Of a stretch of DNA of 64,000 nt, positions 56,098-63,570 are shown one piece after another. Position numbers and translations under genes: made by a program. Origin of the DNA: Haliotis rufescens (Eukaryota); NCBI RefSeq assembly GCF_023055435.1, contig NW_025964372.1, forward strand, positions 9,610,001 to 9,674,000, given 5' to 3'. Below the pieces are notes generated by a model that was not told where the DNA came from, searched no databases, and worked only from the letters and a program-made list of their open reading frames with translations. The first letter of the stretch is position 1; every line of letters begins with the position of its first letter.

Positions 56098-56289
56098 CAG
56101 GGGTCCGGAAACCGTCATATGCGCCGGACATGTCCGCTTGGGAATCTCAAATGTACGGTTTAAAATATTGCTTACCGGACATTTAAATTTTTCTGTCTGG
56201 ACATTTAAAAAAGTATTGTCCGGACATTCTTAAATTTTGACCGGACATGATCAACAGTTAGGACTGAGCAGTTTCTGTCTGCAGTTGTA

Positions 56290-58341
56290 CTTACTTACTT
56301 ACTTTGGAGATTTAACGTGCGCTTTCCGACTGATGCGTATTTCGCACACGGGCCGGCCAGGCCATTTAATGTGTTTCCGAAAGGGGCGAAGTTGTCTGTG
56401 CAACCCAAGAGGGGGGTTTAGGGGTTGCTTATATAGAATTTGGGAATTATGAGATTTGGAATAGATGCCGATGGGGTTGGGGAGGAGAACTAAGGGAGCG
56501 GGGTATGGTGGATGTTTGTTTGTTTATGTGATTTTGATTTGGTAGGTTATTGTGTTTTTAGATGCGTTTTATTAGTTCCGTTTTGATTAAGAATACGCCT
56601 AAGGACTTGAAGTTTTCCAGTTTATTTTGTGGGTTAAGTATTGCTTCTAGAGTGAGAGACTTGTTTAGATTGAGGGTGGTTTGTAATGCGGTTCGATGTG
56701 TTAGGTAGTGTGTGCAGTGGATGAGTGCGTGTTCTGGGGTTTCTGGTTGTTTGCAGTATGGGCAGTTACCTGTAGTGTGTTTTTTTTAAATGTATTAGGT
56801 GGTAATTTAGGTTGGTGTGTCCTGTTTGGAGTTTAGTGATTACACTGTCGATTTTTTTTGATGGATGGAGAATTTTTGGTTTGGTTAGTGGTTTGCTGAG
56901 CACTTTTTTGATTTGGCTATTTGAGTTTAGATATAGGTTATGCCATTTTTTTGTGATATTTTGCTTGTTTACACTTTTAATTTCTGATTTTGAGATGGGA
57001 AAGTTTAAGCTTATTTCTGGGATTTTGAGGGATAGTTTAGCTGCTTTATCGGCGTTTTCATTACCGTATATTCCTACATGGGCGGGTATCCACAAGAAGG
57101 TTATTTGTTTGCCAGCCTTAGTTAGGTCGTTGGAGTTTTTAAGTATTTGATTTATTAATTTAGGTCGGTTTTTGGTATTTTTGTTTTGGAGGGCTTGCAT
57201 TCCACTTAGGGAGTCGGTAAGTATTAGGATTGTTTTGGTGGTTTTTGGATTCTTGATTATGGAGGGCTGGGGCCATGCCCATTAGTTCTGCCGTGAATAT
57301 TGATTGGTTGTTTGGGAGTCGGAAGGATTGTGTGGTTTTAGTTGGTTGTGTGGTATGGACTCCGAAACCTGTGTGTTTGGAGGTCGGATCTGAGGATCCG
57401 TCCGTGTAAATGTGACACCAATTTGGCCAATTTTCGTTTATGTATGCTAGTGTGGTAGTTTTAGCTATGTTTGGGTCGGTTTGTTTATTTATTTGGCTAG
57501 CTAGTGTTGTGTCTATTTTGGGGTATTTTAAGTTTAGGGGTGAAGATATTTGATTGTTTGCAGTTTTGTTTAAGATTTTTAATTTGGTGTTCATTTAGGT
57601 AGTTTGTTATTCTTTGGGATATTGGGGTAAGTAAGGCGTGTTTACGAGCTAGAGCTTGGTTTTTTGGGCTGATGTTTTGGTTTATTAAGTTTTGGATGAG
57701 AGGGTTTGATTGGGACACGGCCCAGAAATTTAAGCTTAGCTGTTCCCTGTGTAGACTTAGTGGCATTTCTCCTGTTAAGGCCTGAAGTGAGGTGTAGGAG
57801 GTGCCATGTTGGGTGCGTGTAATTAGTTTGAGAGCCTGATATTGTATTGAGTCAAGTTTTTTATATAGAGAGTTGTTTAGGGTGTTGTAAATGGCGCAGC
57901 CGTAGTCTAGTTTTGATCTAATTAGTGATATGTAGAGAGAGAGGAGGGTATCTTTGGAGGCTCCCCAGTTAGAACCAGTTAGGCATCTTAGGGTGTTTAG
58001 GTCTTTACTACATTTAGTTCTTAGGTTTTGGATGTGAGCATCCCAGGTGAGATGTTCATCGAAAATAAGTCCTAAGAATTTGGTTTGTTTTTGAAATTTG
58101 ATTGTTTGATTATTTAGCTGGAGGATTGGGGAGGCGGGTTTCATGTTTTTATGTTTGAATACTATTCCTGTTGTTTTTTCTGAGTTAAGGGAGAAGCCCC
58201 ATTTGTCAGCCCATTGTTGTATTTTATTAAGAGATTTTTGGAGTAAATTTTGGACCATTTTCATGCTTTTAGTGCGGATCCAGATGGCTCCATCATCCGC
58301 GAATTTTGATGTGTTTACTTTAGGGGATAGGCTGAGGATAC
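56290..58341 (-). mobile_element. 5'-truncated I-group LINE (RT C-terminal half, RNase H, CCHC), (TAAG)n tail, 11-bp TSD CTGCAGTTGTA
   Basis: FADDG, WGASKDTLLSLYISLIRSKLDYG, YTDGS, WIPAHVGIYGNENAD; TSD at 56279-56289 and 58342-58352; frameshifted. Confidence 0.92.
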
Positions 58342-58566
58342 CTGCAGTTGTAACACAATAAACATTATCTACACTGACAAGCTTTGTTTGTTTTGATTGC
58401 TGTAAATACATCGTACCTACATGACAGTCCAAGCGGTCAATCACTGTAATAGGTAATAAACTGAGTTGACACTGATTAATCGAGGATTAATTACTGAGAA
58501 CACCTTGTTAATTTGAGTGAAAGGTGTTTACAACTGTACATAAATACCTTGCATCATCGATGTACC

Positions 58567-58983
58567 GATACAGAACCACACTACAAACCAACCTCAATCT
58601 AAATAAGGTTCCTACTCTAGATGAAATACTAAACCCTCAAAATAAACTAGAAAACTTCAAGGCCCTAGGCGTATTCCTAATCAAAACAGGCCTAATTAAG
58701 CGCATCTAAAAACTAATTAATCTACCAATCCAAAATCCAATAAACATACATACACCCACCTCACCCGGCTCCCTTAGTTCCCTCCTCCACCCACCTCGGC
58801 ATTTATTCCAAATTTTAAAATTTCAAAAAATCGATATAAGCAACCCCTAAAAGCCCCCTCTTGTGTTGCACACACCACTTTCACCCTTCTCGGAATACAC
58901 TAAATGGTCTGGCCAGGCCCGTGTGCGAAATACGCTGCAGTCGGAAAGCGCACGTTAAATCTTCTATATCAGTCAGTCAGTCA
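58567..58983 (+). mobile_element. LINE copy A: 3' ~415 bp, (TCAG)n tail
   Basis: Near-identical to the 3' end of copy B; bounded by GATGTACC on both sides. Confidence 0.9.
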
Positions 58984-58991
58984 GATGTACC

Positions 58992-61294
58992 GTACATCAT
59001 AGGCATATTCCTCGACTTCTCTAAAGCTTTCGATATGGTATGGCACCACGGGCTATTACAAAAACTGAAAAAATAGGACTAAAAGGCCAAACAATAAACT
59101 TCATCCAAGATTTCCTAAACAATCGCAAAATTACCGTGGGTATAGACCATACGCTATCGGACCAGTGTCCCCTAGAAAATGGCACTCCCCAGGGCAGCAT
59201 CCTCAGCCCAACCCTCTTCAATATAATGATAAATGACCTATTCGAGGGCTTATCCCCTAAACTAAACACTTCAAAATTCGCGGAAGACGGTGCCCTATGG
59301 ATCCGCACTAAAAGCATTAAAATGGCAGAAAACTTAATCCAAAAATCTCTAAATAAAATACAACAATGGGCAGACAAATGGGGCTTCCCTCTTAACTCAG
59401 ACAAAACAACAGGAGTAGTATTCAAACATAAAAACATGAAACCTGCCTACCCAATCCTCCAGCTAAACAACCAAACAATCAAATTCCAAAAACAAACCAA
59501 ATTCTTAGGACTTATTTTCGATCAACACCTCACCTGGGAGGCTCACGTCCAAAACCTAAAAACTAGATGCAGCAAAGACCTAAACACATTAAGATGTCTC
59601 ACCGGCTCTAACTGGGGAGCCTCCAAAGATACCCTCCTCTCACTATATACAACACTAATTAGATCAAAACTAGACTACGGCTGCGCCATATACAACACCC
59701 TTAACAACTCTCTATCTAAAAAACTTGACTCAATACAATACCAAGCCCTTAAACTAATTACACGCACCCAACATGGCACCTCCTACACCTCACTTCAGGC
59801 CCTTACAGGAGAAATGCCACTAAATCTACGCAGGGAACATCTAAGCCTTAGATTTCTGGGCCGCGTCCCAAACAAACCCTCTCATCCAAAACCTATTTAA
59901 CCAAAACATTAGCCCAAGCAACCAAGCTCTAGCTCGCAAACACCCCTTACTCACCCCAATATCCCAAAGAATAACTAACTACCTCAATGAACACCAAATT
60001 AAAAATCTTAAACAAAACTGCAAAAAATCAAATATCTTCACCCCTAAACTCAAAATACCCCAAATAGACACAACGCTAGCTAACCAAATAAATAAACAAA
60101 CCGACCCAAACATAGCTAAAACCACTACACTTGCATACATACACGAAAATTGGCCAAATTGGTGTCACATATACACTGACGGATCTTCAGACCCGACCTC
60201 CAACCACACAGGCTTCGGAGTCCATACCACACAACCAGTTATATCCACACAATCTTACCGACTCCCTAACAACCAATCTATATTCACGGCCGAACTTATG
60301 GGCATGGCCTCAGCCCTGCATAACCAACAATCTAAAAACAACACAAAAATCCTAATTCTCACCGACTCCCTAAGTGGACTACAAGCCCTCCAAAACAAAA
60401 ATACCAAAAACCGACCTAAATTAATAAACCAAATACTTAAAAGCTCCAACGACCTAACAAAAGCAGGCAAACAAATAACCTTCTTGTGGATCCCCGCCCA
60501 CGTAGGAATTTACGGCAACGAAAGCGCCGATAAAGCAGCTAAATAATCTCTCAAAATACCAGAAATAAGCCTAAACCTACCCATCTCAAAATCAGAAATT
60601 AAAAGTGTAAACAAACAAAAAATAACCAAAAAATGGCATAATCAATATCAAAACTCAAATAGCCAAATCAAAAAAGTGCTCAGAAAACCACTAGCCAAAC
60701 CTAAAATCCTACACCCCAAAAAAAAAAATTGACAGATTAATTACAAAACTCCAAACAGGACACACGAACCTAAATAACCACCTAAAACAACTTAAAAGAC
60801 ACACCACAGGAAACTGCCCCCACTGCAAACAACCCGAAACCACAGAACACGCACTCATCCACTGCACCCACTACCAAACACACAGAACCACACTACAAAC
60901 CAACCTCAATCTAAATAAGGTTCCTACTCTAGATGAAATACTAAACCCTCAAAATAAACTAGAAAACTTCAAGGCCCTAGGCGTATTCCTAATCAAAACA
61001 GAACTAATTAAGCGCATCTAAAAACTAATTAATCTACCAATCCAAAATCCAATAAACATACAAACACCCACCTCACCCGGCTCCCTTAGTTCCCTCCTCC
61101 ACCCACCTCGGCATTTATTCCAAATTTTAAAATTTCAAAAAATCGATATAAGCAACCCCTAAAAACCCCCTCTTGGGTTGCACACACCACTTTCACCCTT
61201 CTCGGAATACACTAAATGGTCTGGCCAGGCCCGTGTGCGAAATACGCTGCAGTCGGAAAGCGCACGTTAAATCTTCTATATCAGTCAGTCAGTC
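58992..61294 (+). mobile_element. LINE copy B: 5'-truncated RT + RNase H + CCHC, (TCAG)n tail
   Basis: FLDFSKAFDMVWH, GTPQGSILSPTLF, WIPAHVGIYGNESAD, CPHCKQPETTEHALIHC; frameshifts; bounded by GATGTACC. Confidence 0.93.
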
Positions 61295-61302
61295 GATGTA
61301 CC

Positions 61303-61361
61303 GTGTGCGAAAGACGCATCAGTCGGAAAGCGCACGTTAAATCTCCAAAGTAAGTAAGTAA
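61303..61361 (+). mobile_element. LINE copy C: 59-bp extreme 3' end, (TAAG)n subfamily
   Basis: Matches the 3' end of the 56290 copy (gcatcagtcggaaagcgcacgttaaatctccaaagtaag); bounded by GATGTACC. Confidence 0.85.
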
Positions 61362-61598
61362 GATGTACCTCATTATCCTCACAATGCTACGATATATCAG
61401 ACAAGAAGCGAAAGCGTGATGACAGCCAGTCGACCGATGCAGATCAGTCGAGCGGATCTGCCAAACCCTCAAAGTCTGGACGATCATTTTGTAAGTCGAA
61501 GCTAACGACTTTCACTTGGTTGACATACAATGAAGATTTTGCAGATTTTATTGTTTTCAGTAGCTAGTCGTATATTGAATCTTGATTGACCGCCATTT

Positions 61599-63570
61599 TG
61601 GATAAAGAGTTTAAACAGGCTAATATACGATCAAACAACCTATAAGAAAAGAATATTTCTGTGAAAGATGTCTGCATGGATACAGCAGACAAGATCTTTT
61701 AGAAGCGCATAAAGAAGACTACAGAGGCCTGTGAGAAGTCAAGGAGTTGTCATGTTTGTAATAAACCCCTCAATGGTGATTCGGTAGGAGATTATTGTCA
61801 TGTCATGGGTAATTACAGGGGAGCCACGAATAACGAGTGTAACTTGAAACTTAAAATGAATTCTCAAATAATACCAATCATAACCTTAGAGGATATGATT
61901 CTCATCTCAACATGCAAGCTATCTCAAAGACCGATGACAGTTGAACGCGCATTCCTAATAATATGGAAAGATATATCTCATTCTCCTTGCCAAATACTAT
62001 ACTTTATACGGACAAGGATGGGAAAGCGAGAACAAAACAAAGTAATGGACTTAGATTCACAGATAGTGTACAGCTTCTGTTCTCTTCCCTGGACAATTTA
62101 GCTAATGCAAACAATCCCAATGACTTTGCTTCAACAAATCAATATAATGATCGGTTAACCCAGCATTTGTTGCTAAGATAAGGTGTATATCCTTATGAAT
62201 ATATGGATGATTGGTCTAGATTCGATGAAACTAAATTACCACCCATTGAATCATTCTATAGTAACTTAACAGAATCTAAGATAACCGATGCTGATTATAA
62301 ATACAGTCTTAATGTGTGGGATAAATTAGGTTGTAAGAATTTAGGTGATTATCATGATCTGTATTTAAAAACCGATGTACTGTTACTCGCCGATATATTT
62401 GAGATATTTTGAAAGTCATGTTTAAAACAATATGGCTTGGATCCGGCATGTTACTATTCCAGTCCCGGACTCTTGTGGGATACATTGTTTAAGAAGACCG
62501 GTGTAGAATTAAAATTACTCACAGATTACGATATGCACTTGTTTGTTGAGAAAGGATTAAGAGGTGGTATATCAATGACAGTGAAAAGGTATTCTAAGGC
62601 TAATAATAAATTAGCAGAAGGATATGATTCGAGTAAACCTACTACGCACATTTTTTTTTTCGACGCCAACAATTTGTATGGATGAGCTATGAGTAAACCT
62701 TTGCCCACGGGTGGTTTTGAGTGGGTAAACAATATTGATGTGAATAATATTCCCACAGATTCTGATAAAGGATACATACTAGAAGTTGACTTAGGAGATC
62801 CAACAGAGTTACACAAAGACCATAACAGTTATACGCTAGCTCCCGAAAGATTAATGGTTAATAGAGATCATATGTCAGAAGATCAACATAACTTGATGGG
62901 AAGGACTACATTAGCTAACGTAGAAAAACTTGTACCAAATTTGATGGATGAGACAAAATAGTCCACTATAGAAATCTCCAGTTATATCTATATCAAGCAT
63001 GAAACTAAATTAAATACACAGAGTTCATAAGTTTGATCAAAGCCCTTGGCTGAACACAGATTTATGAAAGATGGCTACTAGTTATTTCGAAAAGCACCTA
63101 TGTAAGCTCATGAATAACTCAGTATTTGGTAAAACTATGGAGAATCTAAGGAAGCGTGTTGATGTTAAATTGGTCATATTTAATGAGGAAGAAAGATTTA
63201 GGAAACTTATAGCTAGTCCAGCTTTTAACAGAAGTAGGAATTTGATAATGACCGTAGCGGCATTGCATAAGCGGAAGAGTAATATAAAAATTCAACAGAC
63301 CGGTCTGCGTTGGTATGAGTATTCTTGACTTGTCAAAACACTTAATGTGTGACTTATATTACAGTGAACTTAAGAAGCAATATGGTGATAGATGCGAGGT
63401 GTTATATACCGACACAGATTCTTTGTTGATGGAAAAACAAACCGAGGATGTGTATAAAGATATGGCAGAAAAAATAGATATGTACGACACGAGCGATTAC
63501 CCAAAAGATTATCCATTGCACAGCTCAGTAACTAAAAAGGTATTAGGTAAGATGAAGGATGAATGTGTGG
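61599..63570 (+). pseudogene. Remainder of the Polinton-type DNA polymerase B (Zn finger, endonuclease VII-like insert, exonuclease and polymerase motifs), 3'-truncated
   Basis: FCERCLHGY, CHVC...DYCHVMGNYRGA...CNL, HNLRGYDSH, GVYPYEYMD, YLKTDVLLLADIFE, RGGIS, DANNLYG, KLMNNSVFGKTMEN, YTDTDS, GKMKDE; many stops and frameshifts. Confidence 0.93.

What the first reader, a model, noticed from the sequence alone, without database searches (positions are those of the whole stretch)
58559..61369. Three I-group LINE copies from two subfamilies stacked at one GATGTACC site: candidate sequence-specific retrotransposon
Seen in sequence: GATGTACC occurs four times (58559, 58984, 61295, 61362). It separates three same-orientation LINE copies with different 5' truncation points (~415 bp, ~2.3 kb, 59 bp). 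Two end in (TCAG)n and one in (TAAG)n with a distinct 3' sequence, so they cannot all be one tandem duplication. Removing them restores a single site, catcatcGATGTACCtcattatcc. Established: sequence-specific targeting with tandem stacking among APE-type LINEs is known from the R1 and Tx1 clades. Inference: these elements carry the WGA...LIRSKLDYG and RNase H signature of I/Nimb-like LINEs, for which I know of no specific target, so this may be an undescribed site-specific family.
Basis: partly seen in the sequence, partly recalled or inferred. Interest (0 to 1): 0.85.

Follow-up and report, generated by a model that had tools for sequence, protein, structure and literature searches.

The report
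LINE insertion hotspot downstream of TATA box
Three retrotransposon (LINE) pieces really are stacked at one 8-base site, but the site is not a recognition sequence: this LINE group nicks DNA about 14 bases downstream of a TATA-like box. The small DNA transposon hosting the stack carries such a box, so many of its copies were hit independently.

Summary
GATGTACC occurs at 58559, 58984, 61295 and 61362 and separates three same-orientation LINE pieces of 417, 2303 and 59 bp, from two subfamilies about 17% apart.

- The LINE group has about 4,860 3' ends in this 1.33-Gb genome. Thirty sampled copies all have different flanks, so it is not an R1/Tx1-style site-specific family.
- The stack sits in a 1.14-kb hAT-like non-autonomous DNA transposon with about 420 copies, 14-bp inverted ends and 8-bp target duplications.
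- The same phosphodiester bond (within 1 nt), in the same orientation, carries LINE inserts in at least 13 other copies, most of them demonstrably independent. Their lengths run from 64 bp to about 5 kb, and at least three lineages are involved.
- The shared feature of targets is a TATA-like box at -20 to -15 from the first nick. It is present in 17 of 19 insertions whose duplications could be resolved. A genome-wide spacing test (TATAAA to the start of the 59-bp copies) peaks at the predicted distance.
- The hotspot (CATAAATA, 12 nt, nick) fits this rule. The left copy of the duplication keeps the box, so the site can be hit again, which gives the stack.

The box-to-LINE-5'-end distance (about 28-33 nt) equals the usual TATA-to-start-site spacing, which suggests promoter capture. 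That part is inference.

Long-read confirmation was not possible.

The parts
56098..56287 (+). Left end of the host element, a hAT-like non-autonomous DNA transposon (family consensus positions 70-237, starting with the 14-bp terminal inverted repeat).
   Evidence: BLAST of the family consensus against the window. Inverted ends and 8-bp target duplications were found in 39 of 41 copies.
56289..58332 (-). A fourth LINE copy of the same group, inverted, 2.05 kb and 5'-truncated. It is inserted at host positions 229-237, with a 9-bp duplication at 56279-56287 and 58342-58350.
   Evidence: 88.6% identity to piece 2 over reference positions 257-2302. ORF 57497-58444 on the - strand has an RVT_1 match at E 9e-07 (29.2 bits, just under Pfam's 29.6-bit cut-off).
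58342..58566 (+). Host element segment (consensus 229-453) leading up to the hotspot.
   Evidence: 96.9% identity to the host consensus.
58539..58546 (+). TATA-like box CATAAATA of the host element, at -20 to -13 from the first-strand nick (between 58558 and 58559).
   Evidence: Read directly. The same position is 88-94% A/T across 17 resolved target sites.
58559..58566 (+). Copy 1 of the target-site duplication GATGTACC. It is the only copy that keeps the host TATA box upstream.
58567..58983 (+). LINE piece 1, 417 bp, 5'-truncated, TCAG-tail subfamily.
   Evidence: 98.8% identity to the 3' end of piece 2.
58984..58991 (+). Copy 2 of the target-site duplication.
58992..61294 (+). LINE piece 2, 2303 bp, starting inside the reverse transcriptase. 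It contains the reverse transcriptase C-terminal part (59040-59897), RNase H (60298-60543), a Cys-His motif, the 3' stem-loop (61221-61256) and a (TCAG)n tail.
   Evidence: Pfam RVT_1 E 6.5e-18 and RNase_H E 4.7e-10. Translation.
61295..61302 (+). Copy 3 of the target-site duplication.
61303..61361 (+). LINE piece 3, a 59-bp 'mini' copy of the TAAG-tail subfamily. It consists only of the 3' stem-loop, a linker and the tail.
   Evidence: 83.9% identity to reference positions 2240-2301. RNA fold -15.5 kcal/mol, z -2.9, with the stem starting at the first bases of the copy.
61362..61369 (+). Copy 4 of the target-site duplication.
61362..61600 (+). Host element continues (consensus 446-688) and is then truncated.
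   Evidence: 95.9% identity to the host consensus.

Best explanation
The stack is the product of three separate target-primed reverse-transcription events. All three used the same bottom-strand nick inside a resident copy of a 1.14-kb hAT-like non-autonomous DNA transposon.

The elements are LINEs that carry reverse transcriptase and RNase H. Their close relatives also carry an apurinic-type (APE) endonuclease. They are dispersed through the genome, but they do not choose targets at random. The first nick falls about 14 nt downstream of a TATA-like hexamer lying on the same strand as the LINE sense strand (box at -20 to -15). The second nick follows 7-13 nt further on.

The host transposon carries such a box, CATAAATA, about 40 nt before the start codon of its remnant transposase exon. 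This makes one phosphodiester bond in about 420 dispersed copies a recurrent target.

After an insertion, the left copy of the duplication still has the box at the right distance, so it can be nicked again. Later insertions pile up on the left and push older ones to the right. That yields X-LINE-X-LINE-X-LINE-X.

Shown here: independent recurrent use of the site, its strand specificity, and the TATA-like box at a fixed distance.

Inferred: which protein reads the box (a DNA-binding part of the LINE proteins, or a tether to TBP/TFIID bound there), the order of the three insertions, and the idea that the spacing places the LINE 5' end at the start site of the captured promoter.
For: Dispersal.
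- The 3' 22-mer has 4,860 matches at up to 2 mismatches.
- Thirty sampled copies all have different downstream flanks.

Host.
- About 420 copies of each flank.
- 14-bp inverted ends and 8-bp duplications in 39 of 41 copies, median length 1,139 bp.

Recurrent use of the site.
- LINE tails abut (G)ATGTACC in at least 12 distinct loci plus two more found through loci.
- Insert lengths differ: 59, 64, 88, about 390, 417, 2.3 kb (twice, from different subfamilies), about 2.8, 3.3, 4.9 and 5.0 kb.
- At least three lineages are involved.
- Three of the 30 loci cut from the 83 copies with an exact left flank are occupied.
- The opposite orientation is seen at most once.

TATA rule.
- In 17 resolved targets, positions -20 to -15 are 88-94% A/T against a 61% background, and 15 of 17 have at least 5 of 6 A/T there.
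- Two further sites fit.
- In the genome-wide search TATAAA-N(5-45)-mini-copy start, 19 of 31 distinct sites in the listed rows have a gap of 22-27, where a uniform spread predicts 4.5.
- The reverse-complement motif gives almost no site-derived matches.
- In a second repeat, two junctions share the same box and differ only in duplication length.

Architecture. Relatives at 47-48% identity in the reverse transcriptase have the layout Exo_endo_phos, RVT_1, RNase_H in about 1,250 aa.
Against: - The TATA rule rests on 19 resolved sites plus one pattern experiment in a single genome. No more genomic sequence could be cut out.
- A+T-rich boxes are common. TATAAA alone is expected about 2 million times in this genome (my arithmetic). 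The rule therefore does not by itself explain why this box is occupied in at least 3% of copies when the average box must be far below 1%.
- Other A+T-rich hexamers in the same host element carry no inserts in the 53 copies read.
- Occupancy is higher in copies with CATAAATA (7 of 83) than with CATTAATA (2-3 of 235; Fisher p 0.002-0.004). However, the first group is older (median pairwise identity 94.4% against 98.1%), so this natural experiment is confounded.
- Two of 17 targets lack the box.
- The inverted LINE in the window has only a weak one (read by eye).
- The stack was not checked against reads.
Confidence: 0.7

Rival explanations
1. A truly sequence-specific LINE family (R1/Tx1 style) whose endonuclease recognises GATGTACC or the surrounding host sequence.
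For: At least 16 insertion events fall on one bond of one repeat, all in one orientation. This is more than 10,000-fold above a uniform expectation: 4,860 copies on 2 x 1.33 Gb, times 420 sites, gives about 0.0008 expected.
Against: More than 99% of copies lie elsewhere with unrelated duplications. Every tail-adjacent GATGTACC lies in this host repeat. The 16 other resolved targets share nothing with the hotspot at or after the nick.
Confidence: 0.03
2. The hotspot reflects chromatin or transcription rather than sequence read by the LINE. In this view the LINE ribonucleoprotein is tethered to TBP/TFIID or a pre-initiation complex on functional TATA promoters, as TRE5-A is tethered to TFIIIB in Dictyostelium. 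This is a variant of the best explanation that differs only in who reads the box.
For: - The boxes look like real TATA boxes (TATAAAAG, TATATAAG). They are often followed by G+C-rich sequence, with A/T only 29-35% at -12 and -11.
- The motif is orientation-specific.
- This one box is far hotter than average, as expected if only bound boxes are used.
- It lies about 40 nt upstream of the start codon of the host's remnant ORF.
- In Drosophila, de novo I-element insertions are moderately enriched in promoters (PMC10018349).
Against: No expression or binding data could be obtained. The host copies are non-autonomous relics and may not be transcribed. A nick 14 nt from the box would lie under TFIIB/Pol II in a full pre-initiation complex.
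Confidence: 0.3
3. The stack arose by unequal recombination or tandem duplication between copies of the target-site duplication. This is how TSD-(SINE-TSD)n arrays and Alu 'target site triplications' are explained.
For: Structures of the form TSD1-(SINE-TSD1)n are described in bivalves and attributed to unequal recombination between duplications (PMC11481361).
Against: The three units differ in 5' truncation point (417, 2303 and 59 bp). One belongs to a subfamily 16-17% divergent. Recombination cannot create different truncations ending exactly at the duplication.
Confidence: 0.02
4. Assembly artefact: reads from different occupied copies of the host repeat were collapsed or chained at the shared 8-mer.
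For: The host is a repeat of about 420 copies and several copies carry LINEs at this site, so mis-joins are conceivable. No read check was possible.
Against: No other locus found has piece 1 or piece 2's junctions. Comparable [3' end]-duplication-[mini copy] stacks occur at 20 matches (about 14 distinct junction types). The contig is long and both flanks continue the same host copy.
Confidence: 0.05

Closest known systems
Tx1L LINEs inserted at one site in the Tx1D DNA transposon of Xenopus laevis (from my own knowledge: Garrett, Knutzon and Carroll 1989)
   Same: An apurinic-type (APE) endonuclease LINE is found repeatedly at one defined site inside a family of DNA transposons, and a minority of the transposon copies are occupied.
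   Different: Tx1L is found essentially only in that target. Here fewer than 1% of LINE copies are in the host repeat, and the common denominator of targets is a TATA-like box at a distance rather than the junction sequence.
Position-specific integration of Dictyostelium TRE5-A upstream of tRNA genes through TFIIIB (PMC6101501 and PMC5391098, listed)
   Same: A LINE with an APE endonuclease integrates at a fixed distance from a promoter element rather than into a fixed sequence, and the duplications are of random sequence.
   Different: The landmark there is the Pol III machinery on tRNA genes, at about 48 bp. Here it is a TATA-like hexamer 14 nt from the nick, and no protein partner is known.
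Insertion hotspots inside other transposable elements, and shared-duplication tandems (nested-TE hotspots in human, PMC2836564; TSD1-(SINE-TSD1)n arrays in bivalves and Alu target-site triplication, PMC11481361)
   Same: Independent retroposon insertions fall at identical positions of an older repeat, and tandem units are separated by the same duplication.
   Different: Those tandems consist of like units and are ascribed to recombination. Here the units differ, and the hotspot can be tied to a sequence landmark.
I / Nimb-type LINEs (for example the Drosophila I element, and Nimbus of Biomphalaria)
   Same: Reverse transcriptase followed by RNase H, a C-terminal Cys-His motif, an APE endonuclease in relatives, simple-repeat tails, and a molluscan context (a Haliotis hit).
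   Different: Clade membership could not be tested by phylogeny here. No TATA-spaced targeting is reported for these clades in the papers I could search.

Membership tests
Sequence-specific APE LINEs (R1 / Tx1 type) | Nearly all copies lie in one target sequence | tested here: not met
   30 of 30 sampled 3' ends have unrelated flanks. Only 6 of about 4,860 are followed by GATGTACC.
Sequence-specific APE LINEs (R1 / Tx1 type) | Conserved sequence at and downstream of the nick | tested here: not met
   The duplications of 16 other insertions share no motif with the hotspot.
Sequence-specific APE LINEs (R1 / Tx1 type) | Reverse transcriptase falls in the R1 or Tx1 clade | not testable with these tools
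   No labelled reference reverse transcriptases were available, and the protein libraries return no clade names.
I-group / Nimb-like LINE | Reverse transcriptase domain | tested here: met
   Pfam RVT_1 E 6.5e-18 for window 59040-59897 and E 3.2e-30 for the L047 copy.
I-group / Nimb-like LINE | RNase H downstream of the reverse transcriptase | tested here: met
   Pfam RNase_H E 4.7e-10 for window 60298-60543.
I-group / Nimb-like LINE | N-terminal apurinic-type (APE) endonuclease | tested here: inconclusive
   Seen only in relatives at 47-48% reverse-transcriptase identity (P0034, P0035, P0037: Exo_endo_phos, RVT_1, RNase_H). No full-length copy from this genome could be read.
I-group / Nimb-like LINE | Phylogenetic placement within I or Nimb | not testable with these tools
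   No labelled references were available.
hAT-superfamily non-autonomous DNA transposon (the host) | 8-bp target-site duplication and short terminal inverted repeats | tested here: met
   39 of 41 copies have matching 8-bp flanks (at least 7 of 8). The inverted repeat is 14 bp and begins CAGGGG.
hAT-superfamily non-autonomous DNA transposon (the host) | hAT transposase in an autonomous partner | not tested
   Only a short remnant exon is present. No autonomous copy was sought.
Position-specific (landmark-guided) retrotransposon integration | Fixed distance and orientation relative to a promoter-type motif, with variable sequence at the junction | tested here: met
   The A/T box lies at -20 to -15 in 17 of 19 sites. 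The spacing peak is 19 of 31. The reverse motif is nearly absent.
Position-specific (landmark-guided) retrotransposon integration | Physical interaction with the factor bound at the landmark | not testable with these tools
   This needs biochemistry.
Recombination-made TSD-(unit-TSD)n arrays | Units alike in sequence and truncation | tested here: not met
   The units are 417, 2303 and 59 bp, from two subfamilies.

The most novel reading that the evidence does not exclude
This LINE group integrates at a fixed distance downstream of Pol II-type TATA boxes, either by reading the box itself or by docking on TBP/TFIID. The first nick falls at +20 from the first T of the box and the duplication is 8-13 nt long. 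The 5' end of the new copy therefore lands 28-33 nt from the box, which is where transcription would start. That would be a promoter-capture strategy not described for any LINE, and it would be a natural intermediate between random and sequence-specific targeting.
Probability: 0.35. Interest if true: 0.8.

Novelty: new variant of a known kind. Interest (0 to 1): 0.6.

Why it matters
LINEs with an apurinic-type endonuclease are usually described in one of two ways. Either they are nearly random, with only a short endonuclease motif at the nick, or they are locked onto one repeated sequence. A group that picks its nick by a TATA-like landmark 14 nt away would be a third mode.

It would explain why one bond in a dispersed DNA transposon is hit again and again. 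It would explain how stacks that share one duplication arise without recombination. It would also suggest how such elements obtain a promoter after insertion.

The idea gives a concrete, testable target (box, spacer, nick) for biochemical work on target choice, a question that also matters for retrotransposon-based gene insertion.

For annotation, identical-site insertions in different copies of a repeat cannot be assumed to be inherited.

Tried and rejected
- **More genomic copies.** I did not try to obtain them another way. All 12 searches of the own genome were used.
- **DNA hairpin at the hotspot.** None found (z -0.1).
- **Rfam family for the 3' module.** No match.
- **Tail-to-target base pairing as the cause.** At most 1 nt of overlap, read by eye.
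- **Read-through transcripts guiding homology-based insertion.** Rejected, because the duplications are short with a fixed left edge.
- **A TATA-like motif in the TCAG subfamily's own 3' end (CTATAT, 14 nt from the tail end) seeding stacks on the right.** Not supported. Stacks followed by a mini copy occur after both tail types (13 TAAG, 7 TCAG).
- **L002 and L012 as further stacks.** They are insertions next to rearranged older fragments.
- **The inverted LINE near L031 as a second hotspot.** It lies outside the host element.
- **CATAAATA versus CATTAATA host variants as a natural box mutant.** Confounded by subfamily age.
- **Dating the three pieces to get their order.** All are 1-2% from their nearest relatives, so this is not resolvable.
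- **Pfam on the ORFs at 61805-62682.** No hits.
- **Literature searches for TATA-spaced LINE targeting.** No precedent found. This is not proof of absence.
Full report
**1.

GATGTACC stands at 58559, 58984, 61295 and 61362. Six matches in 64 kb is not unusual in itself: 3.66 are expected, and 21 of 100 shuffles reach 6. What matters is that all four copies sit at LINE junctions.

A BLAST of piece 2 against the window shows the following.
- Piece 1 (58567-58983) is 98.8% identical to the last 413 bp of piece 2.
- Piece 2 (58992-61294) is 2303 bp.
- Piece 3 (61303-61361) is a 59-bp copy, 83.9% identical to the same region.

Pieces 1 and 2 end in (TCAG)n and piece 3 in (TAAG)n. Across sampled genomic copies these two tail types mark subfamilies 81-85% identical over the 3' 440 bp, while copies within a subfamily are 94-99% identical.

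Piece 2 encodes the C-terminal part of a reverse transcriptase and an RNase H (Pfam RVT_1 E 6.5e-18, RNase_H E 4.7e-10). Relatives at 47-48% identity in the reverse transcriptase are proteins of about 1,250 residues with an apurinic-type endonuclease, a reverse transcriptase and an RNase H. The clade (I, Nimb or another RNase H-bearing clade) could not be tested, because no labelled references were available. One named hit, from the abalone Haliotis, suggests a molluscan context.

**2. The families are not site-specific in the usual sense**

The conserved 3' 22-mer has 4,860 matches at up to 2 mismatches in the 1.33-Gb assembly. In 30 sampled copies the sequence after the tail differs every time. 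Only six 3' ends in the genome are followed by GATGTACC within 45 nt.

**3. Those six all lie in one repeat**

Three are in the window. The other three lie in other copies of the same flanking sequence.

That flanking sequence is a repeat with about 420 copies of each flank. An alignment of 50 empty copies gives a unit of about 1.14 kb with 14-bp terminal inverted repeats beginning CAGGGG. In 39 of 41 copies the unit is bordered by its own matching 8-bp duplication. This is a hAT-like non-autonomous DNA transposon, and each copy sits at a different locus.

In the window it is broken into three parts: 56098-56287, 58342-58566 and 61362-61600. A fourth, inverted LINE copy (56289-58332) is inserted at another position of the host. 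That description is correct.

**4. The site is a strong, strand-specific hotspot**

A search for a tail followed by ATGTACCTCAT finds 12 distinct junction loci. Two more occupied copies were found through the fetched loci (C2 and C4).

Where both junctions could be read or paired by coordinates, the inserts are 59, 64, 88, about 390, 417, 2,300 (twice, from different subfamilies), about 2,800, 3,300, 4,900 and 5,000 bp. One insert belongs to a lineage only 68-76% identical to piece 2. These are therefore independent events and not one insertion spread by the host.

Other features of the hotspot:
- The tail always abuts GATGTACC or ATGTACC, so the first nick is fixed to within 1 nt.
- The duplication is 8 nt in most cases and 11-12 nt in two.
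- At most one insert in the opposite orientation was found.
- Three of the 30 loci cut from the 83 copies with an exact left flank are occupied. No LINE of this group sits elsewhere inside the host body in 53 copies read.

With 4,860 copies spread over two strands of 1.33 Gb, about 0.0008 events would be expected at this position in 420 copies. At least 16 are seen.

**5. What the targets share**

I resolved both junctions and the duplication for 16 other insertions. The duplications are 7-13 nt long and unrelated in sequence. Upstream of them, however, a TATA-like hexamer recurs (TATAAA, TATATA, TTTAAA, AATAAA).

Aligned on the nick, positions -20 to -15 are 88-94% A/T against a 61% background. 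Positions -12 and -11 are only 29-35% A/T. Fifteen of 17 sites, counting the hotspot, have at least 5 of 6 A/T in the box. By my binomial arithmetic, with a per-site chance of 0.25, this is below 1e-6 even after allowing for the choice of offset. Two further insertions found later also fit.

An independent genome-wide test used the 59-bp copies, whose 5' ends are sharply defined. In the pattern TATAAA-N(5-45)-copy start, the first 100 listed matches contain 31 distinct sites once two amplified composite families are set aside. Nineteen of the 31 have a gap of 22-27 nt, which is 14 nt plus a duplication of 8-13 nt. A uniform spread predicts 4.5. The reverse-complement motif TTTATA yields almost only internal LINE sequence and those composite families, so orientation matters.

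The hotspot reads CATAAATA, then 12 nt, then the nick, and fits the rule.

**6. How the stack forms**

After an insertion, only the left copy of the duplication keeps the box at the right distance. A new nick there adds a younger copy on the left. On this reading, piece 3 is the oldest and piece 1 the youngest.

The order could not be confirmed from divergence. I tested an alternative, that the CTATAT in the TCAG subfamily's own 3' end directs a nick at the end of its tail. It is not supported, because genome-wide stacks of a 3' end, a duplication and a mini copy follow both tail types (20 matches). Recombination between duplications, the usual explanation for TSD-(SINE-TSD)n arrays (PMC11481361), cannot produce units with different truncation points.

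**7. What remains unexplained**

TATA-like boxes are very common, so the average box must be occupied far below 1% of the time. This one is occupied in at least 3% of copies, and in 7 of 83 copies carrying CATAAATA. Something makes it hotter, either a further sequence feature or real promoter activity.

The box lies about 40 nt upstream of the start codon of the host's remnant exon. Many target boxes look like true TATA boxes followed by G+C-rich sequence. This favours a tether to TBP/TFIID, but direct reading by a LINE protein is equally possible.

Copies with the variant CATTAATA are occupied less often (2-3 of 235; Fisher p 0.002-0.004). They are also younger, so the comparison is confounded. 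No DNA hairpin explains the site.

**8. A functional reading (inference)**

From the first T of the box to the first LINE nucleotide is 28-33 nt. That is the canonical TATA-to-start-site distance. A full-length copy inserted this way would be transcribed from its own first base by the captured promoter.

I found no description of such targeting for LINEs in five literature searches. The nearest analogues are TRE5-A at tRNA genes and the moderate promoter preference of de novo I-element insertions in Drosophila (PMC10018349).

**9. Limits**

- The stack was not confirmed with reads.
- No further genomic sequence could be cut, so the logo rests on 19 sites plus pattern counts.
- No full-length element from this genome was read.

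Noticed in passing
window 61303-61361; loci L001, L006, L007, L008, L013, L016, L017, L022, L024: About a third of sampled 3' ends (9 of 30) are 59-60-bp 'mini' copies with their own duplications. They all start at CCGTGTGCG, the first bases of the 3' stem-loop (RNA fold -15.5 kcal/mol, z -2.9). Reverse transcription seems to stop, or the template to end, exactly at the foot of the hairpin.
   Followed up: partly
own genome, many loci listed (for example C1:42332958, C1:1424392): Two amplified composite families carry the LINE 3' module from CCGTGTGCG onward, joined to fixed upstream sequence. One has TATAAAGTGCTTCC directly before the module. The other has a fixed 32-nt A/T-rich stretch before it. 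They may be SINE-like partners of this LINE, or mini copies amplified inside other repeats. L010 belongs to the first family.
   Followed up: no
own genome: C4:293327, C46:8014658, C379:3625126, C577:1885407 and 1885476, C23:519393, C79:8804430: This looks like a second recurrent stack site. The duplication ACTAACATGA(T/C) lies between a LINE 3' end and a mini copy in seven places, with TCAG-type copies upstream in some and TAAG-type in others.
   Followed up: no
own genome: C13:31490803 and C35:26661183/26661674: The same repeat (TATAAATAAGGGGCG...) carries mini copies whose left junctions differ by 6 nt. This is as expected for two hits with one fixed first nick and different second nicks.
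   Followed up: no
own genome C1:41.1-42.5 Mb: There is a very dense cluster of LINE 3' ends: about 40 of the first 100 listed matches fall in 1.4 Mb. Many are copies of the same composite unit. This may be a tandem or segmentally duplicated region.
   Followed up: no
window 56289-58332 (- strand): A fourth LINE copy of the same group is inserted in the opposite orientation at another host position, with a 9-bp duplication. Its upstream box is only weakly TATA-like (AGATAA).
   Followed up: partly
window 61805-62685: Beyond the truncated host element, several short ORFs look by eye like fragments of a protein-primed family B DNA polymerase, as found in Polinton/Maverick-type elements. Pfam gave no match at E 0.01.
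   Followed up: partly
protein P0045: A close LINE ORF2 relative is deposited as a protein of a bacterial metagenome-assembled genome (Candidatus Thiodiazotropha, MCG8049253.1). This is most likely host-animal DNA binned with the symbiont.
   Followed up: no
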